Virus record (IMG/VR): IMGVR_UViG_3300020473_000011
Span: 124,001 to 188,000 of that record
Direction: 5' to 3' (one strand)
DNA length: 64,000 nucleotides
Position numbers and translations under genes: made by a program. Shown piece after piece: positions 12,143-29,433 of this stretch. The notes under the pieces were generated by a model that was given only the letters and a program-made list of their open reading frames with translations, made no database searches and was not told the origin of the DNA. Numbering within the stretch: position 1 is the stretch's first letter; every line of letters starts with the position of its first letter.

Positions 12143-12289
12143 GTGTTAGAGCTTTTAGTAACATTAGTAGTCGCGCTCGTACTGTGGTTTATACCCGCAC
12201 CGCACGTGAAGGATAACGAAACGTGTCGAGTGTGTGGAGGAATGCGACATGACGGCAGCGTCTGTGAAACAGACAACAATAAACAATAA
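12143..12289 (+). CDS. 48-aa membrane peptide with C-terminal CxxC-H-C motif (type I toxin-like)
   Basis: Manual translation (GTG start) MLELLVTLVVALVLWFIPAPHVKDNETCRVCGGMRHDGSVCETDNNKQ; AAGGAGG RBS; terminator at about 12311-12343. Confidence 0.7.
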   Translation: MLELLVTLVVALVLWFIPAPHVKDNETCRVCGGMRHDGSVCETDNNKQ

Positions 12290-12356
12290 ACAATAAGAAA
12301 CGGGAGTGGGAAGTGGTAGTTGCTTACGGGCTGCTACCCTTTTCGGCCTGCTTAAA

Positions 12357-12480
12357 TGAAAATGGGCTGACCCGTGGCCAACCCATTCAAATAAAGTACA
12401 GTCTGCGCTCACGGAGCAGACCTGTTGTTTAAGTATAAGTATAAGTAATCAGCTCATACTTATGCACCTAGATGCCCAAC
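12357..12480 (-). ncRNA. Putative sRNA 2
   Basis: Minus-strand promoter TTGCAA(12516-12511)-N18-TAGTAT(12492-12487); internal hairpin GTCTGC..GCAGAC; terminator AATGGGTTGGCC/GGTCAGCCCATTTT. Confidence 0.55.
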
Positions 12481-12538
12481 ACCCCTATACTAGTCTACAG
12501 AAATATCTTTTTGCAACTAATGACGAGTGACCTAAACG

Positions 12539-12625
12539 AAAAAGGCCAACCTTTCGGTCAGCCTCTTATCAATGCAGAGAAGGTTTCTCACGTCTTCTCT
12601 TGCCCCCGCTCGCGGAAGCAACACA
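12539..12625 (-). ncRNA. Putative antisense antitoxin sRNA 1
   Basis: Minus-strand promoter TTGCAA(12659-12654)-N17-TATGAT(12636-12631); its 5' end is complementary to 12904-12922; terminator AGGCTGACC-GAAA-GGTTGGCCTTTT. Confidence 0.75.
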
Positions 12626-13001
12626 AGCCCATCATAATCGCACTATCTTTATTTTGCAACATCATTCGGGACGCATACGGCTAAATTTTTTATAAATTAG
12701 TTGAACACTAACTAGGCAAAAAATCGAGAAAGCCGCAGACCCAAAGTGCCCAATGGTGCGTGTAAACCCCTGTCCTGCAACGAATTTAATCTGCAAAAAG
12801 CTTTCGTTGTACAATGGTTGTGGTATAATGGTTTTACTGTTTAGGCAGGAGGTGGCAGCCCTCTCAAGCTGTAGTTCGAGACTTTGAAAACGGGTAAGTA
12901 CCTGCTCGCGGAAGCAACACAATTTTTAGCGTTCCACCTGCTTTTAGAGTCGAACAAACGCTAACCGTGACAGTGAAAACCCATAGCAAAAGGATTCAAC
13001 T

Positions 13002-13190
13002 ATGTTTGATTCACTTGTTATGTTCCTAGCTGAGAATGGCTGGAATCTTTGGGGCGCTGTAGGCACTGTTATTGCAGTTGTCGATAAGCTGGTGGCTTTT
13101 TACTTCAAACGAGCTGATAACAAGCTGTGTAAGGAGTGCGAAAAGCCGAAGAAACATTGCCAATGCACACTAGGAGGTGATCAACACTAA
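13002..13190 (+). CDS. 62-aa membrane peptide with C-terminal CxxC-HCxC motif (putative type I toxin)
   Basis: Hydrophobic N-terminal half, CKEC...HCQC; extended -10 TGGTATAAT at 12821-12829 implies a ~170-nt leader; terminator at about 13205-13231. Confidence 0.75.
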   Translation: MFDSLVMFLAENGWNLWGAVGTVIAVVDKLVAFYFKRADNKLCKECEKPKKHCQCTLGGDQH

Positions 13191-13509
13191 CCGATAAACA
13201 CCACAGAGGGTAGTAGCCGCTGCCCTCTTTTTCTTAGTCATATCGACTTTTCGCGTTACCCAGTATAGCCCTTACCTTGTGACTTTTCCACACCGCAGTC
13301 CTGTTGCGTCGCCTGCAATGCACTTTTTGCAAACTTTCTGCACCATTGACCTTCCAATGTACAACAGTTCAGGTAGAATACCCGTGACTAATTTGAGACA
13401 AACCGCTGACACACAAGGTACTTAGACCTTGCTGTAGAGCTGTTTATGAGATATGAGACAAACCGACTATGAAACGATGCTACCCATGTAGCGTGTTAGG
13501 CGTTCCTGC

Positions 13510-13940: not shown

Positions 13941-14318
13941 TTGATGAAGAAATTACTTTTAGCAGCTGCCTGCACCATTGGCCTTACGGGCTGCTTCTCT
14001 GATAAACCGAAGGTTGTCTACGTGGATAGCCAAACAGGCAAGACCCTGAGCGAGGCTGACATACAGCTACGTCCACGCATTGTATCTAACCGAGACTACA
14101 GCGTCGTGTGCTTGAACAACGTACTCTACTACCGCTATCAATACTTTAGACAGGCATCGCTTGCCCCTGTAATGGTACCTCTTGAAGGTGGCGCTGCTAA
14201 GGTGAAGCCCGAACACCTGCTCAAGAAATTAGAGACACCCGACCCATTCAACAAAGATGTCCCTGCCGAGCTGCCTGCTGACAGTGTCTATACACAGCTT
14301 GTGGGAGTGACGTGCTAA
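13941..14318 (+). CDS. Lipoprotein
   Basis: Signal peptide MKKLLLAAACTIGLTG-C (lipobox); paralog of 19572..19988. Confidence 0.8.
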   Translation: MMKKLLLAAACTIGLTGCFSDKPKVVYVDSQTGKTLSEADIQLRPRIVSNRDYSVVCLNNVLYYRYQYFRQASLAPVMVPLEGGAAKVKPEHLLKKLETPDPFNKDVPAELPADSVYTQLVGVTC

Positions 14319-14872
14319 TGATCTCAATCGTCAACGTATCGGATGAGTCCGCCCCGCTGGTGGGGGATAACCAGTACGAGCTGCGTATTAACAACAGAGT
14401 CATGACGACGTTTCAGCATGAGCGTAGCGTTGATGGCCTGTCACGCTGTTTACGTGATGCAGCTGACGCGATGGACGCTAAACTCGCGAAAGACGCTCAG
14501 CGCTTCAATGAGGACACGCTAAGGCAGCTGGCCGCTATTCTAAGTGACGGCGTCGCTGATAGCCCCTCTCAGGCACAAATCAAGAAAGCCAAGAGAAAAG
14601 CTGACAGGCCACCAGCGTCACCCAGTGAGGTGCTGTTCAAATTCTTTGCTGATCAAGGACTCACAATTGAGCAGGCAGCCGAGCGTATGGGTGTCTCAGT
14701 CATGATCCTTTACCGCCTAAAGTCATCGAACTCAATGTCGGTAAAGCTGGCGGTGATGCTTGAAGAGCATTTCAACATTAAGGCAAGTCAGCTGTTTTAC
14801 ATTGAAGAGCAGTACAAGCGCCATAAGCTGCAACGTGCCTTAGAGCGTGCCAAGCAGAGGGAAGAACTCTGA
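14312..14872 (+). CDS. Protein with C-terminal HigA-like XRE HTH domain
   Basis: SPSEVL...GLTIEQAAERMGVS...MSVKLAVMLEEHF...LF.IEEQY. Confidence 0.7.
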   Translation: MLMISIVNVSDESAPLVGDNQYELRINNRVMTTFQHERSVDGLSRCLRDAADAMDAKLAKDAQRFNEDTLRQLAAILSDGVADSPSQAQIKKAKRKADRPPASPSEVLFKFFADQGLTIEQAAERMGVSVMILYRLKSSNSMSVKLAVMLEEHFNIKASQLFYIEEQYKRHKLQRALERAKQREEL

Positions 14873-15192
14873 TGGGTGTTGTTGAGGATATGCGTAGCAT
14901 GATAGAGCTTACCGATGAACCTGCATGTGAAGACCTACAAACGTCACTGGGTGCAGGTGTATTCCTAAAGAAGTACCTTGAGTCATTAGGGTCTAACCCA
15001 ACGCAGGCTGCTGCCGTATTAGGCGTGAATAGCTCCACGACTAAGCGCCTGTGTGACGGCGGTGCCCTGACTATCGAAATGGCGGCCAAGCTGCATAAGT
15101 ATTATAACCTGTGTTCGTACGACTTGTTCGAACTGGAAGCGTCACGCAAGGCCACCAAGGCACGACAACTAATTGAACAAGGCTTAGTGTAA
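14872..15192 (+). CDS. HigA-like XRE HTH protein
   Basis: GVFLKKYLESLGSNPTQAAAVLGVNSSTTKRLCDGGALTIEMAAKL. Confidence 0.75.
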   Translation: MGVVEDMRSMIELTDEPACEDLQTSLGAGVFLKKYLESLGSNPTQAAAVLGVNSSTTKRLCDGGALTIEMAAKLHKYYNLCSYDLFELEASRKATKARQLIEQGLV

Positions 15193-15200
15193 GCCTTTAA

Positions 15201-15446
15201 TTGAGACGGGAAAGAGACATGACAAACAAGAGTAAAATAGCCCTAGGCATCCTATGCGTTGTCCTAGTTATCGGTGGTGTGAGCGCAGCAAGCCGTTATA
15301 TGTCGCGCTGGACATCAACGTTTAGTATTCAGCACAAGATTATTCAACCCAAGGCAGGCAAAGAGTGTGTTGTTGTCTCAACCACCAGCGCTGTTGCGAC
15401 AGACTGCTGGGATGTACCTGCGGCTAAGGTAGGAGGTCGTCACTGA
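15201..15446 (+). CDS. Small membrane-anchored protein
   Basis: N-terminal TM segment; C-x-VV...DCW. Confidence 0.6.
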   Translation: MRRERDMTNKSKIALGILCVVLVIGGVSAASRYMSRWTSTFSIQHKIIQPKAGKECVVVSTTSAVATDCWDVPAAKVGGRH

Positions 15447-16321
15447 TGGACACGAATGAGTTAGCAACCCGAATGAAGATGTACGAGCTGTCTACGCCTC
15501 ATCGGATCCCGAGCCTGATGCCGATTGTCGTCCGTTTGGATGGGCGTAGCTTTTCGACGTTTACGAAAGACATGAACCGTCCCTTTGATACACAGTTCCA
15601 TGAGGCGATGTGTGCTCTCACAGCCTTCTTAGTGGAGCGGACTAACGCAACCATTGGCTACACCCAGTCTGACGAAATCAGCCTTGTCTTTTTGAACACG
15701 AACTATAAGTCAGATCACCTCTTCGGTGGGCGTAAGCAGAAGATTGAGTCATTACTCGCTGGTATGGCCTCAGCCTTCTTCATGACACAAGTTCAGCAAT
15801 ACTGGCCAGATAAGCTGGTGGACTTCCCCCACTTTGATGCGCGTGCGGTTGCCTTCCCCAATGAAGTAGAAGCCTATAACTGTATTGTATGGCGCGAACA
15901 GGATGCAACTAAGAACAGCGTTCAGTTACTGGGTCAGTCCTACTATAAGCACAGCCGCTTGGTGTTGCTGTCTAACAAAGCGATTCAACACGCGCTCTTT
16001 ACTGAGCACAACGTTAATTGGAACGACCTAGAACCATGGCAAAAGCGCGGTACCTACTTTCAGCAACGTAAGGTAGACGGCGTTCGCTGTGCTGTGGCTC
16101 TCGATATGCCACCCATCACGCGTTGCAGTAATGCCATGGGTGTCTTGCTCCGAGGTGAGCAGCCTGCTGAGTTATTCATGAGCTGGCCAAAACCCCTTGA
16201 TACGAATGAGGCTCGTATGGAAGACGGTACGTTAGCTAGTCTTGAGAAGAGAAAGCAGCAAGTTCTTGCGTCTATGGGCGTGCCATCAGACATTATCGGT
16301 GCGAACGGAGGGTATAAGTAA
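15446..16321 (+). CDS. tRNA(His) guanylyltransferase Thg1-like protein
   Basis: VRLDGRSFSTFT, PFD, YTQSDEISL, FGGRKQK, FDAR, WREQDATKNS, KRG motifs. Confidence 0.95.
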   Translation: MDTNELATRMKMYELSTPHRIPSLMPIVVRLDGRSFSTFTKDMNRPFDTQFHEAMCALTAFLVERTNATIGYTQSDEISLVFLNTNYKSDHLFGGRKQKIESLLAGMASAFFMTQVQQYWPDKLVDFPHFDARAVAFPNEVEAYNCIVWREQDATKNSVQLLGQSYYKHSRLVLLSNKAIQHALFTEHNVNWNDLEPWQKRGTYFQQRKVDGVRCAVALDMPPITRCSNAMGVLLRGEQPAELFMSWPKPLDTNEARMEDGTLASLEKRKQQVLASMGVPSDIIGANGGYK

Positions 16322-17681: not shown

Positions 17682-17726
17682 AGACACTGAGACACTGAGA
17701 CACTGAGACACTGAGACACTGAGACA
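17682..17726 (+). repeat. Tandem repeat (AGACACTG)x5.6 abutting a start codon
   Basis: Read directly from the sequence; the ATG follows at 17727. Confidence 0.95.
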
Positions 17727-24659: not shown

Positions 24660-26772
24660 GCGTCACGCCTACTTACTAAACCAAACTTGATACCTCTTAG
24701 ATTTACCTGCGTAGCACAGACGTGCTCGCGCGTGTGTCACGTAATCACGCCCACTACAAAGCAAACCCGATCACACTCGCCTCAATAAAGCTAACTATAC
24801 CCGCATGACCTCGGGTCAGAGTGCTAAGCGAACCGCAATTCGTTGTACAACACTTTCGTTTTTATAGTGGTATATACCCTGCCCTGTCCTCGGGTCAGAG
24901 TATAGAGAAGCTTTCGGGTGCCCTTTACGAACTTCCTACTGCCCCACCGATATTAGATAAACGCCTGTTTAAAGGTCACTATAGTGGTTCTTTGGCTTTC
25001 CGTAAGTGACCCGAGGTCACTTAGCTGTGGTAGTGGACTCGTATAAGCAGGTCTTAGTGAACACTGTACAACGTTTTATCTGTCGGATCGTAAGGCTAGC
25101 ACTCGGCTAGCTGCGCCTTCTCGACACTGCGGTTAACTAAGGGGTGCTTGTAATACATGGGGATGTGACCCAAGGTCAGGCTCAAAGGTCGAGGTGAGGG
25201 TCAACAGTCTCACCCAACTGGCAGCGTTGTACAAGCATTGCCTAAACCCCTGCGCCGCAGTGGGCTAATTTTTCGTACCGACGATGTGAGGGTTGAGGCG
25301 ACCGTACGCCAGAAAAACCTTTAATTTCATACAAACTCTATATGTATACGCCTAGACACACTGCAAAAGTAGGCGTCATGGTGTCGGCTGAACGGTTTAT
25401 TTTGGGTTACACACTGCGGCACAGGGGATTTCGTTGAATCAGAGTGTTAGGCAAAGTGAGCTAATACCTTATGTAGCAGGGGTATAGAGTGGAACCATAA
25501 TGACAACCCCTCGCTTCGCTCGGTTTAATCACGGCTTAGTCGCAGCTTTAATTACTAGTTTCCGTCGGTTCAGTAACGTTTTTGATGGCGGTTAGGGTTG
25601 TGCTGTTACTGATATTAGATGTGCATTGGTGCGTAGTCTGCTACTCATTAGTGGTTCTGCTTGTCGATTAGTGAGTAGAGTGTTACTCATAGTGAGAAGC
25701 TATTTGTGCCTATCTATTTACATTAATGGTTCTAGTATTGCTCTCTTGCTGTCTAGTTGTGGTCTTATAGTTGCGTCAGTTAATGGTGCTGGTTTGCATT
25801 CTCTGGTTTTACTTGGCGTTACTGAGTGTCTACTTTGGTTGCAAATATGATGCACGGTTATCGCATTGCTTGTATTGCTTGAGTGTATGTAGTTATGTAT
25901 AGGGGAAATGCAAACAGGGTTTTACTAACTTTCTAGTGTTGCAGTGATATTCCGCAACTGGGTAGTTGAACCTCAGTATAGGAAAAAGTGCGTGTGACCT
26001 CGGGTCATATTGGGGTGTTTTGTGTCTACTTTTGCGATTCTAGACACTGATTTCGGTCTGACCTCGGGTCATGGGTCACTATTTAGCGGTGTATTGTACA
26101 ATGCTTTGGGGTTGTGCCCTCGGGTCAGATAACCTTTAACTATATAGGTTTCTTGCCGAATCTCGGTATAACCGCACTGGCGGCGGCAGGTTAATAACAG
26201 TAGCGATGCCGCTTGTTAGTTCATAGTGTGACGTGGAATGTTTATAGTGAGCTTTATATGTGGTCGTACATTAATAGTAACGTGTATGTATACGTATATA
26301 GAATGAATAGTAGAATGTCTGGAATAGCTTATAGTAATAGGCTTGTATGTATCTATAGAATGTAATGTATATGTGCATACTAATATTATGTATGTGTACA
26401 TGTGTAATATAGTAGATGTAGTTATAGTGTCTATAGTGAGCATAGTGTTGTTCATAGTATTTATGTTCTTACTGAGGCAATGAGTTATCGACTATCCTGT
26501 GCGGGCGCGCAAGTGTTCTTTCTTTTTAGTGGAAGGTGGCTGCTTTCTTGTGTTGGCCTGCCCTCGGGTCAGGGTGCTTGTGGGTGTTCTTTTCGTTGTA
26601 CAATGGATTTTGACTGTCCTGTGCGGGGCGCTGCGGGCTTTTCTCGTATGAAGATGAGTGCTTGTGTGGGTTTTACTTTTTAGATGGCTTGTGGGGCGTC
26701 TGAGGGCGTTTTTACGTTTTTGAGGGGGTGTGGCGACTATCCTGTGCGGCCGCCAAGCGGAAGTAGAGGCGC

Positions 26773-27150
26773 TTAACGCGTCTCTACTGAGTTATTTTCT
26801 TGTTCTTTACTATCTATCTCTTCGAGCAGCGCCTCAAGGTAAGATAGGCGGAACGCAGCGCGTATGTCGTCCATCTTGAAGTCTAGCGCGCATAACTTGG
26901 TGAACAACTCGCGATGCTCGGTTACGAACTCACGTGTTAGCTCAATCGTATTTGAAATCATAGAAAGCACATACCCATCTACTAGTTCTAGATTGTCACC
27001 GATGTGCGTCATTAACTCGGCTTTCTTACCTGTGTTATGTAACGTGGCAATTTCAGTCATAAGTTTCCAGCGCGCTTCGCGTTGCTCTTCTGTTAGTTCC
27101 TGATTAGGCACTGTTATCGTATCGGTCGTCATAGTGTGGTTAGTCTCCAT
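26773..27150 (-). CDS. Hypothetical protein
   Basis: 125-aa ORF, last gene of the minus-strand operon. Confidence 0.65.
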   Translation of the reverse strand: METNHTMTTDTITVPNQELTEEQREARWKLMTEIATLHNTGKKAELMTHIGDNLELVDGYVLSMISNTIELTREFVTEHRELFTKLCALDFKMDDIRAAFRLSYLEALLEEIDSKEQENNSVETR

Positions 27151-27340
27151 GTGTTAGTAGTTCGTTTACGGCTTCTTCGGCAGCTACTATTACGGCGTGT
27201 TCGTTCTGGGTGTATTCATTATCGTACTCGCCGTCTAGGCCGCTTACCCATTCTTGCCATTCCGCTTCCGCAATCTCCTGATCTATCCTGTGCGAGGCGA
27301 AGATGCTTAACCATTTATCTTTGTAGTTACTTACGTGCAT
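27140..27340 (-). CDS. Small acidic hypothetical protein
   Basis: 66 aa, AAGG RBS. Confidence 0.6.
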   Translation of the reverse strand: MHVSNYKDKWLSIFASHRIDQEIAEAEWQEWVSGLDGEYDNEYTQNEHAVIVAAEEAVNELLTHGD

Positions 27341-27342
27341 TG

Positions 27343-27642
27343 TTACGCTACCTTACCCGTTTGAATATACGCGTCGATGGCTTCTTGTTGAGTCTTGGCG
27401 CAACAGCCTTCACCCATACCGATTATCTCGCGCATCGCCTCTGATTCGCCTAACGTACAATAGTGGTTATCACCGTCAGTCTTTAATAAAGAGCAGGGCG
27501 CTGTTGTTTGGCCAGTTACGGTCTTACCGACTGAGCATACTTCCGTTAAGCAGCAATACCCGCAGTGATTACAGGCTTGACCATATTTAGGCTTGCGCTC
27601 GACGGCGACCGTCATGACTTTAATTAAGTTACCTTTAAACAT
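27343..27642 (-). CDS. CxxCxxCC (YkgJ-like) metal-binding protein
   Basis: CNHCGYCC...PCSLL...YC...GCC. Confidence 0.7.
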   Translation of the reverse strand: MFKGNLIKVMTVAVERKPKYGQACNHCGYCCLTEVCSVGKTVTGQTTAPCSLLKTDGDNHYCTLGESEAMREIIGMGEGCCAKTQQEAIDAYIQTGKVA

Positions 27643-27662
27643 GAGTCTGTCCTCGGGTCAGA

Positions 27663-27932
27663 TTATTTAAGTGGGGTGGCTGAGAAGATTGGCTCGTACT
27701 CACGCTCTACTGTAAAGATACCTCGGCTCACACCTGTCGCATCAAAGATTTGAACTGTGCATGGCCAGCTTGCTTCATGGCCGTCATTGTCGTGATAGTG
27801 TTCTGCTGCGGCCTCTGCTACATACTGTGGGTACTCTTCAATATCCCAGTGTGTTAGGAAGCTGTCATCAGGCTCGTGATCGGGTTTGTCATTGTAGGGG
27901 ATGCTAAAGCCATATTTGTTTTCGTTGCTCAT
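27663..27932 (-). CDS. Acidic hypothetical protein
   Basis: 89 aa, AAGGA RBS. Confidence 0.65.
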   Translation of the reverse strand: MSNENKYGFSIPYNDKPDHEPDDSFLTHWDIEEYPQYVAEAAAEHYHDNDGHEASWPCTVQIFDATGVSRGIFTVEREYEPIFSATPLK

Positions 27933-28073
27933 TGTCTTCCTTTCTCTCTGACCTCGGGTCAGATTATTTATGACTGTCCTGTGCGGGGCGCTATCTCTTG
28001 GCGTCTGCCCTTGGGTCAGACCAGTCTAGTTTCGATTAGGGAGTTTGACCCGTCTGTCCTCGGGTCAGAGTAT

Positions 28074-28307
28074 TTACTTGATGTACTGCCTGATATGGCC
28101 GTCTTTGCACAGGGCTGTTAGATTACCCAGTTCGTCGAAGGCAAAGGCATGTACTTCAACACCAGCGCCTTCCTTACTATCTTGCTTGGTGATTTTACCA
28201 CCGCGAAGGTGTCTAGCCTTTAAGTAGGTTGCCAGCTTTTTGTCACTTACCCATTTCTCATCAAGCCCTTGTAGCGCTTCCTCAATTACCTGTGCTGTTA
28301 CTTTCAT
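28074..28307 (-). CDS. Hypothetical protein
   Basis: 77 aa, AAGGA RBS. Confidence 0.65.
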   Translation of the reverse strand: MKVTAQVIEEALQGLDEKWVSDKKLATYLKARHLRGGKITKQDSKEGAGVEVHAFAFDELGNLTALCKDGHIRQYIK

Positions 28308-28350
28308 AATCCTTAACCTATCTACTTAGAGTTAGATGCCTGCCCTCGGG

Positions 28351-28842
28351 TCAGACCGACTGTCCTGTGCGGGCGGCGCGTTGCGCTTTACTTCGTTGTA
28401 CAATGTTTCTTAGTGGGTCACGTAAGTCTATGACTACAGGGGCAAACTCGATGCACTCGAAGTCATGTACCCACTGTACGTTATCACCTAAATCAAGAGT
28501 GGCCTGTGTACGTTTTGCAACGACACTCACAAGATTCTTTGCATGGTCAGCATCTAAGTCCACATAATGGCCAAAGAAGCCGTCCTTTTCTATGCGGCCT
28601 GTGTAGGCTATGTAGTACTTGCCCGCAGTCTCCGCCATTTCGCGAACAGTGACAGTCCCGACTTCAACCAGTGTAAAGGTACCTATAGGGAAACTTGGGC
28701 GGTCAAATTCATCACTCGATACATCTTTAGGCACAAGTGCTCTATAAGTCTGACCCGCGTGGCACCGCGCAAACTCTTCATCGAAAAGTGCAGAGAGTAG
28801 CCGCCTGTCATCAGTGACCTTAATAACGGTTATCGTAGACAT
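28351..28842 (-). CDS. Hypothetical protein (paralog of 28870..29340)
   Basis: TITVIKVTDD...HAGQTYRA...FPIGTF vs TITHIKVTSD...HAGKTYRA...FPVGTF. Confidence 0.75.
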   Translation of the reverse strand: MSTITVIKVTDDRRLLSALFDEEFARCHAGQTYRALVPKDVSSDEFDRPSFPIGTFTLVEVGTVTVREMAETAGKYYIAYTGRIEKDGFFGHYVDLDADHAKNLVSVVAKRTQATLDLGDNVQWVHDFECIEFAPVVIDLRDPLRNIVQRSKAQRAARTGQSV

Positions 28843-28869
28843 GTGGTGTTATTCCTCTAGTGGACGCTA

Positions 28870-29253
28870 TTAACAAAACCAAGCAGGGGCGTACGCGTTT
28901 TCCCAGACAATTGCTGAGTTAGTTTCGCCCGCCACATCAACAGCAATCTCAAAGGCGTCAACACCCTCAAGCTCGTCAGTCTGGTCACTGAAACCAAAGT
29001 CGTCGGCGCTGCCTTCGAATGACACTTCGTAAAGCTCTTCTTCGTCGTGCATTTCAGTGATGATCACCTTACCTGTCGAAAGGTCTTCGAAAGTACCCAC
29101 TGGGAACTTAACTGTTGAGCACTCAGCCCAACCATCGTTTAAAACGGCACGGTACGTCTTACCTGCATGCTGTTCAGCGTAAGTAGCATCCCATACACGG
29201 GTTAAGGCTTCTTTGTCACTGGTTACCTTGATGTGGGTAATTGTTTTGTACAT
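28870..29253 (-). CDS. Hypothetical protein (paralog of 28351..28842)
   Basis: Start placed at MYKTIT because the TTGTAC-N17-TATAGT promoter lies at 29316-29288. Confidence 0.7.
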   Translation of the reverse strand: MYKTITHIKVTSDKEALTRVWDATYAEQHAGKTYRAVLNDGWAECSTVKFPVGTFEDLSTGKVIITEMHDEEELYEVSFEGSADDFGFSDQTDELEGVDAFEIAVDVAGETNSAIVWENAYAPAWFC

Positions 29254-29433
29254 AGTGTCGGTCTCATTTATATCGGTTAATGAGGCCACTATAGCAGCTT
29301 GATAATCGTTGTACAACGTTTTTATTTGGTTTAATTCCACTGTGGGGCAGGGGTTTTCGTGACTGTCCTGTGCGGGGCGCAGTAGGGCTGAATGTCAATG
29401 GTGCAGGCTGTCTGACCCGCACTCATTTTTTAT

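What the first reader, a model, noticed from the sequence alone, without database searches (positions are those of the whole stretch)
12539..13231. Probable new type I toxin-antitoxin system: divergent sRNA with 19-nt perfect complementarity to the leader of a membrane/Zn-finger peptide
Seen: a 19-bp direct repeat GCTCGCGGAAGCAACACAA at 12608-12626 and 12904-12922. The first copy lies immediately downstream of a minus-strand promoter (TTGCAA-N17-TATGAT) and is followed by a hairpin and an intrinsic terminator, giving a ~85-nt RNA. The second copy is in the ~170-nt leader of the 62-aa hydrophobic peptide 13002..13190, about 80 nt upstream of its ATG. Known: this is the architecture of tisB/istR1, dinQ/agrB, shoB/ohsC and zorO/orzO, where a divergent sRNA blocks an upstream standby site. 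Inference: an analogous phage-borne system whose toxin has an unusual CxxC-HCxC tail that I do not recognise. Its promoter carries a TTGTACAA box, as tisB and dinQ carry LexA boxes.
Basis: partly seen in the sequence, partly recalled or inferred. Interest (0 to 1): 0.9.

Follow-up and report, generated by a model that had tools for sequence, protein, structure and literature searches.

The report
Phage antisense sRNA controlling small-protein gene
An uncultivated marine giant phage carries a small RNA gene whose first ~19 bases match, by base-pairing, the leader of a neighbouring 62-residue protein gene, and the match has been kept by paired changes in three diverged phage lineages. The RNA-RNA control switch is therefore real and resembles bacterial type I toxin-antitoxin pairs, but whether the protein is toxic is untested.

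Summary
The exact 19-nt direct repeat (12608-12626 / 12904-12922) is unique in the window.

The window is a marine jumbo-phage contig (assemblies of 281-419 kb). I found five further variants of the peptide (50-53% identity in the multiple alignment, 53-60% by BLASTP) on syntenic contigs. They form three lineages, and each keeps the whole module.

- The complementarity is 19, 18 (15 in one variant) and 24 nt in cognate pairs, and at most 9 nt in non-cognate pairs.
- Eight positions changed in both copies together.
- The flanks of the two copies are unrelated.

This is strong comparative evidence for RNA-RNA pairing.

The architecture matches the tisB/istR-1, zorO/orzO and timP/TimR class: divergent genes, a target far upstream, and an SD/AUG held in a conserved hairpin.

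Not supported:
- The TTGTACAA box is a phage-wide motif (36 copies), not a LexA-like operator.
- The His in the tail is not conserved. The invariant motif is C-x2-C-x2-PK-x2-C-x-C.
- Hydrophobicity is borderline.

Toxicity, and repression as the direction of control, remain inferred. The module matches no known toxin family or Rfam family.

The parts
12631..12659 (-). sRNA promoter: -35 TTGCAA (12659..12654), 17-nt spacer, -10 TATGAT (12636..12631)
   Evidence: Found by the consensus scan. In the alignment of 8 loci, GTTGCAAA is invariant and the 17-nt spacing is kept. The -10 hexamer stays TAnnAT (TATGAT / TACTAT / TAACAT) while the spacer sequence diverges.
12538..12626 (-). Predicted sRNA ('sRNA-A', ~87 nt; 102-106 nt in relatives): short 5' single-stranded tail, SL1 (12620-12601), SL2 (12600-12576), terminator
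   Evidence: The minus strand folds at -36 kcal/mol (z -3.8); the + strand folds at -22. The RNAalifold consensus has 5 pairs changed on both sides, mostly in SL2. The covariance model R1 finds one strong copy per locus (63-119 bits). No Rfam family matches.
12608..12626 (-). sRNA 5' seed UUGUGUUGCUUCCGCGAGC, complementary to the leader
   Evidence: The complementarity starts within 1-2 nt of the predicted +1 in all three lineages. Cognate complements are 15-24 nt; non-cognate ones are at most 9 nt.
12538..12567 (-). Intrinsic terminator of the sRNA (stem 12567-12540, then a U-run)
   Evidence: The stem contains G.U pairs, and lineage differences are G.U<->A-U exchanges that pair only on the minus strand. 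This fixes the direction of transcription.
12750..12782 (+). Conserved non-coding element CCAATGGTGCGYGTAAACCCCTG..GCAACG upstream of the peptide promoter
   Evidence: 81-83% identical between lineages. It is not an ORF: the L016 group has an in-frame stop after 16 codons (sequence). The CCCTGTCCYGCA part recurs 35-42 nt upstream of two other TTGTACAA boxes.
12807..12829 (+). Peptide-gene promoter: TTGTACAA box (12807-12814), 9 nt, extended -10 TGgTATAAT (12821-12829); predicted +1 near 12836
   Evidence: 85-92% identical between lineages. The box is one of 36 in the window.
12836..13001 (+). Structured 5' leader (~166 nt; 158-167 nt in relatives)
   Evidence: Alignment and consensus fold. The first ~45 nt are 71-89% identical between lineages.
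12904..12922 (+). sRNA target site in the leader, 79 nt before the ATG; its 3' half is CA-rich and predicted unpaired
   Evidence: The distance to the ATG is 74-80 nt in all lineages. Unpaired probability is 0.8-0.99 over ...CAACACAAUUUUU.
12966..13022 (+). Structure enclosing the translation start: outer stem CGUGAC (12966-12971) / GUUAUG (13017-13022); inner hairpin CAUAG (12982-12986) / CUAUG (13000-13004) around the SD AAGGA (12990-12994)
   Evidence: Consensus fold. The outer stem has 2 pairs changed on both sides. The inner hairpin is invariant.
13002..13190 (+). 62-aa ORF: N-terminal helix with invariant FLAxNxWNxxGAxGTVIAVVDK, a basic linker, and invariant C-x2-C-x2-PK-x2-C-x-C
   Evidence: The 95%-identical variant L005 has 4 synonymous and 0 non-synonymous differences. 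Five homologues are 50-53% identical in the multiple alignment and 53-60% by BLASTP. The AF2 model has low confidence (pLDDT 53) and shows a helix over residues 2-42.
13205..13233 (+). Intrinsic terminator of the peptide gene, making it a monocistronic unit
   Evidence: An equivalent hairpin plus T-run of different sequence is present in relatives.

Best explanation
This is a two-gene RNA-control module carried by a clade of uncultivated marine jumbo phages.

A sigma-70-type promoter drives a minus-strand sRNA of ~87 nt (102-106 nt in relatives) that ends at an intrinsic terminator. About 190 bp away, and in the opposite direction, a monocistronic gene for a 60-64-aa protein is transcribed with a structured ~160-nt leader. 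The protein has an N-terminal, moderately hydrophobic helix and a basic tail with a Cys4 knuckle.

The first 15-24 nt of the sRNA pair with a CA-rich, largely unpaired stretch of the leader, 74-80 nt upstream of the start codon. The SD and AUG themselves sit inside a conserved hairpin.

Most likely the sRNA represses synthesis of the protein. It could do so by occupying an upstream ribosome entry (standby or enhancer) site, by creating an RNase III substrate of about 20 bp, or both. This is how tisB/istR-1, zorO/orzO and timP/TimR work, so the module is a type I toxin-antitoxin-like pair.

What is shown (computationally):
- both transcription units and their structures;
- the complementarity and its co-variation;
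- the coding status of the ORF.

What is inferred:
- that both RNAs are made;
- that the effect is repression (my estimate ~0.6-0.65, given pairing);
- the standby/RNase III route;
- that the protein is membrane-active or toxic (~0.4).

My probability that the antisense pairing itself is functional is about 0.85-0.9.
For: The repeat is exact, unique and non-random.

Relatives found through the peptide have a neighbouring GNAT-like protein only 58-64% identical. They still keep every part of the module:
- the invariant -35 and 17-nt spacing;
- the sRNA hairpins, with compensatory changes, and a minus-strand-only terminator;
- the promoter, leader, SD hairpin, ORF and terminator.

Seed and target differ between lineages but match within each:
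- complements of 19 / 18 / 15 / 24 nt against at most 9 nt for non-cognate pairs;
- duplex energies of -46 to -52 against -23 to -37 kcal/mol;
- eight columns changed in both copies with identity kept, and unrelated flanks.

The complementarity begins at the predicted +1 in every lineage. The target's distance to the AUG is constant at 74-80 nt. Its 3' half is predicted unpaired.

The ORF is under purifying selection: 4 synonymous and 0 non-synonymous differences against L005, and 9-10 synonymous among 15-16 differing codons in the comparisons with the L018 lineage.

The known class with this layout and mechanism is described in PMC4147584 and PMC11228461.
Against: There is no expression data for either RNA.

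The promoter match alone is not above chance: 4 sites were found in 6 kb, against 7 expected.

Only three independent lineages exist, so the structural covariation in the leader is thin. Most conserved stems are invariant.

The peptide is not clearly a membrane peptide (maximum KD 1.2-1.6). It matches no toxin, defence or holin family above threshold. It also carries a Cys4 knuckle, which known type I toxins lack as far as I know (own knowledge).

In relatives the sRNA terminator lies only ~60-140 nt upstream of the GNAT-like gene on the same strand. The RNA could therefore also serve as that gene's leader.

The sign of regulation cannot be read from sequence.
Confidence: 0.7

Rival explanations
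1. The antisense pair is the same, but it is not a toxin-antitoxin system. The sRNA times or tunes expression of a harmless phage protein during infection, for example a membrane-anchored or nucleic-acid-binding zinc-knuckle protein.
For: The peptide has borderline hydrophobicity and a strongly basic Cys4 tail: net tail charge is +8 to +10 in relatives and the motif is invariant. It matches no toxin family. The gene lies among small accessory or regulatory genes (HTH proteins, a Thg1-like protein, a lipoprotein-like ORF) in what appears to be a giant phage. The peptide promoter carries the phage-wide TTGTACAA motif while the sRNA promoter does not, which would fit different timing of the two RNAs.
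Against: The layout is the signature of type I toxins rather than of ordinary regulated genes: a stand-alone monocistronic unit, a long structured leader with a sequestered SD/AUG, and a dedicated divergent sRNA (PMC4147584, PMC11228461). Nothing here excludes toxicity.
Confidence: 0.35
2. The sRNA activates rather than represses. Pairing would remodel the leader so that the sequestered SD/AUG opens, an anti-antisense mechanism as with DsrA and rpoS.
For: The SD/AUG is predicted to be sequestered. Several invariant leader segments (GCUGUAGU, CCAUAG, ACUAUG) can form alternative pairings. A 5-bp pairing between the target core and AUGUUU is possible in all lineages.
Against: The target is not the main partner of the SD/AUG region in the consensus or in the single-sequence folds. 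The possible 5-bp contact is weak and is one of many. A perfect duplex of about 20 bp more typically leads to RNase III cleavage and silencing (PMC11228461).
Confidence: 0.1
3. The minus-strand RNA is mainly the 5' leader or attenuator of the downstream GNAT-like gene. The pairing would couple expression of the two divergent genes rather than define a free-standing sRNA.
For: In the L016 and L018 lineages the terminator lies ~60-140 nt upstream of the GNAT-like start codon on the same strand. I saw no obvious separate promoter in between.
Against: In the window lineage a + strand 48-aa gene and a second sRNA-like unit lie between the sRNA and the GNAT-like gene, which has its own TATAAT-type element. 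The sRNA therefore travels with the peptide gene, not with the GNAT-like gene. The terminator is strong and conserved in all lineages.
Confidence: 0.1
4. The two copies act at the DNA level, either as twin binding sites for a sequence-specific protein or as recombination sites kept identical by gene conversion.
For: They are direct repeats 296 bp apart that stay identical within each lineage.
Against: - Identity stops abruptly at 15-24 nt with unrelated flanks, which is too short for conversion.
- In L015 the sRNA-side copy has drifted at its edges while the leader copy has not, so the copies mutate independently.
- The repeat begins at the predicted +1 of a conserved promoter and is followed by conserved hairpins and a strand-specific terminator.
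- The site is long and non-palindromic, and a binding protein would have had to change specificity at 8 positions.
- No deletion variant between the repeats was seen among the 9 places shown of 22 contigs.
Confidence: 0.04
5. A mok/hok-like sub-mechanism: the sRNA blocks a leader uORF whose translation is needed to open the peptide's start site.
For: In the L016 and L018 lineages an AUG lies at the 5' edge of the target. In the L016 group that uORF stops 4 nt after the peptide AUG.
Against: The window lineage has no start codon at that place. The uORFs have no SD and differ in length and stop position. From my own reading of the uORF translations, the few differences within the L016 group in that frame are all amino-acid changing. 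The timP uORF precedent was tested by mutation in PMC11228461.
Confidence: 0.07

Closest known systems
tisB/istR-1 (E. coli type I TA)
   Same: - The genes are divergent and do not overlap.
- The sRNA 5' end pairs with about 20 nt of a long 5' UTR, far upstream of a structurally sequestered RBS.
- In tisB/istR-1 the pairing competes with standby ribosomes and the duplex is cut by RNase III (PMC4147584, PMC11228461).
   Different: - There is no LexA/SOS box.
- There is no sequence similarity in either the RNA or the protein.
- Dependence on 5' processing is unknown.
- The protein is longer and less hydrophobic, and has a Cys4 tail.
- The module is encoded by a giant phage.
zorO/orzO, shoB/ohsC, dinQ/agrB (E. 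coli)
   Same: [quoted passage not shown]
   Different: The families are unrelated. The protein here is only borderline hydrophobic. Toxicity and RNase III dependence are untested.
timP/TimR (Salmonella type I TA)
   Same: In timP/TimR the sRNA binds about 50 nt upstream of the RBS in a multi-stem-loop 5' UTR whose last stem-loop traps the SD, and no direct RBS block occurs (PMC11228461). The leader here likewise has several conserved stem-loops, with the target in a weakly structured one and the SD/AUG in the last.
   Different: I could not show a pseudoknot requirement. There is no sequence relationship.
Prophage-borne type I TAs (bsrG/SR4 and yonT/SR6 of SPbeta)
   Same: Both are phage-genome-encoded pairs of a small protein and an antisense RNA (PMC8270828).
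   Different: The SPbeta pairs are cis-encoded, overlapping antisense RNAs in a temperate Bacillus phage. Here the sRNA is non-overlapping, acts in trans, and comes from an uncultivated marine jumbo phage.

Membership tests
Type I toxin-antitoxin system (generic definition) | An antisense RNA with complementarity to the toxin mRNA | tested here: met
   A perfect complement of 19 nt. It is maintained through eight two-sided changes across three lineages.
Type I toxin-antitoxin system (generic definition) | A small, hydrophobic, membrane-active protein (typically under ~60 aa) | tested here: inconclusive
   The protein is 60-64 aa. Maximum KD over 19 residues is 1.2-1.6, which is borderline. The helix contains polar residues. 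The AF2 model has low confidence and shows a helix over residues 2-42.
Type I toxin-antitoxin system (generic definition) | The protein is toxic when expressed without the RNA, and the RNA neutralises it by blocking translation or destabilising the mRNA | not testable with these tools
   This needs expression experiments.
Known type I toxin and antitoxin sequence families (Pfam, NCBIfam, PADLOC, Rfam) | A significant match to a curated toxin HMM or an antitoxin covariance model | tested here: not met
   Pfam gives only P21 holin S at 15 bits, below the 26-bit cut-off. NCBIfam and PADLOC give nothing relevant. Rfam gives nothing at gathering score; the best match is ctRNA_p42d at 21 bits against a cut-off of 50.
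tisB/istR-1 architectural class (divergent, trans-encoded) | Divergent, non-overlapping genes, with the sRNA complementary to a long 5' UTR and not to the RBS or the coding sequence | tested here: met
   The sRNA spans 12626->12538 and the mRNA starts near 12836. The target at 12904-12922 ends 79 nt before the ATG. The layout is conserved in all lineages.
tisB/istR-1 architectural class (divergent, trans-encoded) | The RBS is sequestered in secondary structure, with an accessible upstream site | tested here: met
   By prediction only. There is an invariant CAUAG/CUAUG hairpin around the SD/AUG, plus an outer stem with 2 compensatory pairs. The 3' half of the target has an unpaired probability of 0.8-0.99.
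tisB/istR-1 architectural class (divergent, trans-encoded) | 5' processing of the primary transcript into the translatable, sRNA-sensitive form, and RNase III cleavage of the duplex | not testable with these tools
   This needs RNA end mapping.
tisB and dinQ specifically | SOS control through a LexA box in the toxin promoter | tested here: not met
   CTGT-N8-ACAG is absent from the locus. The three matches elsewhere in the window are at chance level. The TTGTACAA box is a genome-wide motif with 36 copies.
Phage holins (PF04971 / phrog_4237) | A family-level sequence match shared by the homologues | tested here: not met
   Only 1 of 6 family members hits phrog_4237 (E 6.7e-4). The Pfam hit is below its cut-off. 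No lysis genes were recognised next to it.

The most novel reading that the evidence does not exclude
The module may be a phage-versus-phage device rather than a bacterial-style addiction system. The three lineages carry mutually orthogonal sRNA 'keys' and leader 'locks' (cognate complements of 15-24 nt, non-cognate at most 9 nt). A co-infecting or superinfecting relative could then not silence, or be protected from, the resident phage's membrane-active zinc-knuckle peptide. That would be kin discrimination or exclusion among giant phages, written in an sRNA seed. A related option is an sRNA-gated timer for a membrane-permeabilising peptide in the lytic cycle.
Probability: 0.1. Interest if true: 0.85.

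Novelty: new member of a known kind. Interest (0 to 1): 0.62.

Why it matters
Divergently encoded type I pairs of the tisB/istR-1 kind are described in the papers I read from E. coli and Salmonella chromosomes (PMC4147584, PMC11228461). My literature searches found no such module described in a jumbo phage.

Here an unrelated sRNA/protein pair with the same logic turns up in uncultivated marine giant phages. Natural compensatory evolution supports the RNA-RNA contact almost as a mutational experiment would.

It adds a new sRNA family and a new small-protein family (helix plus Cys4 knuckle). It also supplies three natural, orthogonal seed/target alleles that could be used directly as cognate and non-cognate controls. 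It suggests that far-upstream (standby-type) antisense control is more widespread than the known examples.

If the protein proves toxic, this is a type I TA on a giant phage. If not, it is a clean example of sRNA control of a phage gene.

Tried and rejected
- **Close phage relatives in GenBank:** none by megablast. Only distant protein hits were found.
- **Exact 19-mer and conserved leader patterns:** IMG/VR returned only the source contig. GTDB genomes returned nothing.
- **Peptide homologues:** the word-indexed single-sequence search found only the peptide itself. Full HMMER found one true homologue plus two low-complexity false positives, P0003 and P0004. A profile search added four more, and a further profile search none.
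- **Holin assignment:** rejected.
- **Paralogy between the 62-aa locus and the neighbouring 48-aa locus:** rejected at both the DNA and the protein level.
- **Conserved upstream 'MVRVNPC' ORF across the promoter:** rejected. It was called as an 82-aa gene on L013, but the L016 group has an early in-frame stop.
- **Conserved leader uORFs:** not conserved.
- **A second contact through the invariant SL2 loop UGAGAAAC:** no conserved complement was found.
- **A target for the second sRNA-like unit:** none in the window or the 281-kb contig. Its pairing with the 48-aa mRNA is only about 2.4 sd better than shuffles.
- **AlphaFold model:** confidence was too low (pLDDT 53) to justify a fold search.
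Full report
**1. What the window is**

The region belongs to IMGVR_UViG_3300020473_000011, a 281,557-bp contig. Other assemblies of the same genome reach 419 kb. Several of the samples are marine, including Tara Oceans samples.

Large ORFs hit phage families: virion structural and tail-fibre-like proteins, phrog_877 (VrlC-like), a DNA methyltransferase and a Thg1-like enzyme. Nothing in GenBank phages is close at the DNA level. This is an uncultivated marine jumbo phage.

**2. The observation**

GCTCGCGGAAGCAACACAA occurs exactly twice in the window, at 12608-12626 and 12904-12922. No further match appears even with three mismatches allowed, and none of 100 shuffles gave two matches. The repeat extends to 21/22.

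All other exact direct repeats of 19 nt or more in the 64 kb belong to multi-copy motif families or a tandem array.

The first copy lies directly downstream of a minus-strand TTGCAA-N17-TATGAT (12659..12631). The minus-strand RNA from about 12624 to 12538 folds into:
- a short 5' tail;
- SL1 (12620-12601);
- SL2 (12600-12576);
- a terminator hairpin (12567-12540) followed by a U-run.

Its energy is -36 kcal/mol (z -3.8). The + strand gives only -22 (z -1.5).

The second copy lies in the leader of ORF 13002-13190. That gene has an extended -10 (TGgTATAAT, 12821-12829) and its own terminator (13205-13228). The predicted leader is about 166 nt, and the target ends 79 nt before the ATG.

**3. Comparative evidence (the decisive part)**

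The peptide has no hit in a word-indexed search of 5.8 billion proteins except itself. A full HMMER scan found one 62-aa homologue. A profile search found four more. Against the window peptide they are 50-53% identical in the multiple alignment and 53-60% by BLASTP.

Their contigs are syntenic: a GNAT-like gene on the minus strand, an intergenic region of 550-620 nt, then the peptide gene. The GNAT-like proteins are only 58-64% identical to the window's, so these are well-diverged phages.

They fall into three lineages:
- window and L005;
- L016, L017, L024, L015 and L013;
- L018 to L023.

Every locus that reaches far enough upstream has the whole module:
- the invariant GTTGCAAA -35, a 17-nt spacer of different sequence, and a TAnnAT -10;
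- an sRNA of 102-106 nt, with one extra hairpin;
- the same terminator;
- the TTGTACAA/TGgTATAAT promoter;
- a leader of 158-167 nt;
- the ORF and its terminator.

Seed and target sequences by lineage:

| Lineage | Shared sequence | Perfect complement |
|---|---|---|
| Window / L005 | GCTCGCGGAAGCAACACAA | 19 nt |
| L016 group | CTCCACGGGAGCAACACA | 18 nt |
| L015 (L016 group; sRNA copy drifted at its edges) | CCACGGGAGCAACAC | 15 nt |
| L018 group | TGTTCCCTCACAGAAACAACATAA | 24 nt |

The L016-group duplex can be extended by G.U pairs; this is my own reading of the sequences, not a tool result.

Non-cognate sRNA/leader combinations share at most 9 nt. Cognate duplex energies are -46 to -52 kcal/mol, against -23 to -37 for non-cognate pairs.

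Eight alignment columns changed in both copies with identity kept, and the sequences flanking the two copies are unrelated. Between lineages the target segment is only 56-63% identical, like the rest of the 3' leader.

In every lineage the complementarity starts within 1-2 nt of the predicted +1 of the sRNA promoter. It lies 74-80 nt upstream of the AUG.

In L015 the sRNA copy has changed at both edges while the leader copy has not. The two copies therefore mutate independently and are not being homogenised.

Taken together this is the pattern expected from selection on an RNA-RNA duplex. I consider the pairing established as far as sequence analysis can go.

**4. Structures**

The sRNA consensus fold has five pairs with two-sided changes, mainly in SL2. 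The terminator stem differs between lineages only by G.U<->A-U exchanges, which pair on the minus strand alone. The direction of transcription is therefore not in doubt.

The SL2 loop UGAGAAAC is invariant and unexplained.

In the leader, the SD (AAGGA, 12990-12994) and the AUG lie in an invariant CAUAG/CUAUG hairpin. That hairpin is enclosed by an outer stem (12966-12971 / 13017-13022) with two compensatory pairs. A hairpin just 3' of the target also shows compensatory changes.

The 3' CA-rich half of the target (…CAACACAAUUUUU; …ACAACAUAACC in the L018 group) is predicted to be unpaired, with probability 0.8-0.99. It faces the single-stranded 5' tail of the sRNA.

The first ~45 nt of the leader are better conserved (71-89%) than the 3' half of the ORF (42-43%). 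They contain GCUGUAGU, which can pair either with CCAUAG or with ACUAUG. This could be a switch, but because all of these segments are invariant it cannot be tested by covariation.

**5. The protein**

The ORF is real. The 95%-identical variant L005 has four differences, all synonymous. In the two comparisons involving the L018 lineage, 9-10 of the 15-16 differing codons in the N-terminal 29 are synonymous; window versus L016 gives 4 of 14.

Hydrophobicity is borderline for a transmembrane helix: maximum KD over 19 residues is 1.2-1.6. The tail is strongly basic in relatives. AlphaFold gives a low-confidence model (pLDDT 53) with one long helix over residues 2-42.

There is no Pfam, NCBIfam or PADLOC family. 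The weak holin hit (phrog_4237) is seen in only 1 of 6 members and is below threshold in Pfam.

'Small helix plus zinc knuckle' is what can be said. 'Membrane toxin' is a hypothesis.

**6.

TTGTACAA is not a gene-specific stress operator.
- It occurs 36 times in the window, against about 1 expected. It is often part of the 18-bp palindrome AATCGTTGTACAACGATT.
- Sometimes a TATAGT/TATAAT hexamer lies 9 or 15 nt downstream.
- A second motif, CCCTGTCCYGCA, lies 35-42 nt upstream of three boxes, including this one.

These are phage-wide promoter or regulator elements. The peptide gene is simply part of that regulon, while the sRNA promoter lacks the box. No LexA box is present at the locus.

**7. 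Mechanism**

I commit to negative control in the manner of tisB/istR-1, zorO/orzO and timP/TimR. The primary evidence is positional:
- a perfect duplex of about 20 bp forms at an accessible CA-rich site far upstream of a structurally closed start site;
- the 5' end of a structured, terminator-ended sRNA forms that duplex.

In the known systems such a site is a ribosome standby or entry element, or part of a structure needed for initiation. The duplex is cut by RNase III (PMC4147584, PMC11228461).

The alternatives are given with probabilities in the rivals section: activation, a role as leader of the GNAT-like gene, DNA-level sites, and uORF coupling.

The window lineage helps against the GNAT-leader idea. 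There, a + strand 48-aa gene and a second sRNA-like unit have been inserted between the sRNA and the GNAT-like gene, yet the sRNA has stayed next to the peptide gene.

**8. Comparison and novelty**

By function and layout this is a type-I-TA-like pair of the divergent, trans-encoded class. By sequence it belongs to no known toxin or antitoxin family, and no Rfam family matches.

Two defining properties of a TA system cannot be tested here: toxicity and neutralisation. One tisB/dinQ-specific property, LexA control, is not met.

Phage-borne type I TAs are known from temperate SPbeta, but those are cis-overlapping (PMC8270828). My literature searches found none described in jumbo phages.

I file it as a new member of a known kind, with an unusual protein partner and an unusual carrier.

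**9. Scores**

- Observation: confirmed.
- Interpretation: partly supported.
- Probability that the antisense pairing is functional: about 0.85-0.9.
- Whole best explanation: 0.7.
- Probability that the peptide is a bona fide toxin: about 0.4.
- Interest: 0.62.

Noticed in passing
window 12356-12516 (minus strand): A second sRNA-like unit ('sRNA-B') lies directly downstream of sRNA-A. It has TTGCAA-N18-TAGTAT (12516..12487), an RNA of ~120 nt with three hairpins, and a minus-strand-only terminator (stem 12387-12367), with z -3.7. It gives a weak full-length hit to the sRNA-A covariance model (16 bits, E 0.02), so it may be a tandem paralogue with a different seed. The whole unit (about 12358-12536) is absent from the 95%-identical variant L005. 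No target was found in the window or in the 281-kb contig.
   Followed up: partly
window 12143-12289 (+), terminator about 12311-12345: An uncalled 48-aa ORF, starting with GTG here and with ATG in variant L005. It has an AAGGAGG-like SD, a strongly hydrophobic N-terminus (KD 2.41), a C-x2-C...C tail and its own terminator. It is present only in the window/L005 lineage and is unrelated in sequence to the 62-aa peptide. It looks like a second stand-alone gene for a small membrane protein with a Cys motif.
   Followed up: partly
whole window, e.g. 4245, 10224, 12807, 20774, 21804, 22197, 29309, 35651: The palindrome TTGTACAA occurs 36 times against about 1 expected. It is often part of AATCGTTGTACAACGATT. 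About eight copies have TATAGT/TATAAT 9 or 15 nt downstream. This is probably the site of a phage-wide transcription regulator, or a -35-like element.
   Followed up: partly
window 10182, 12768, 22162 (+): The motif CCCTGTCCYGCA lies 35-42 nt upstream of TTGTACAA boxes. At this locus it is part of a 33-nt element (12750-12782) conserved in all three phage lineages.
   Followed up: partly
window about 24800-29400 (and 780): There is a cluster of repeat families: CCYCGGGTCAG hairpin-like units (9 copies) and GACTGTCCTGTGCGG (4 copies, up to 22 nt identical). They lie in a stretch with strong negative AT skew (-0.26) and few long ORFs. They could be repeated terminators, small RNAs or regulatory sites.
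   Followed up: no
window 17682-17718: A tandem array of the 8-mer AGACACTG (37 nt).
   Followed up: no
window 13391-13405 and 13451-13465; L013 about 660-735: The direct repeat AT(T/A)TGAGACAAACCG occurs 60 nt apart in the leader of the next gene, downstream of a TGTACAA-N9-TAGAAT promoter-like site at 13356-13379. Both copies are recognisable in the diverged relative L013.
   Followed up: no
window 13944-14318, 14318-15192, 15446-16321: The neighbours are a 124-aa ORF with a lipoprotein signal (LTGC lipobox, by eye), two small HTH proteins (weak Pfam HTH_3 hits) and a Thg1-like tRNA-His guanylyltransferase (phrog_4717, E 4e-73).
   Followed up: partly
sRNA SL2 loop, window 12591-12584 (minus); leader 12869-12876, 12981-12986, 12999-13004: The invariant SL2 loop UGAGAAAC has no conserved partner. 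The invariant leader segments GCUGUAGU, CCAUAG and ACUAUG can form mutually exclusive pairings around the start codon, which could be a structural switch.
   Followed up: partly
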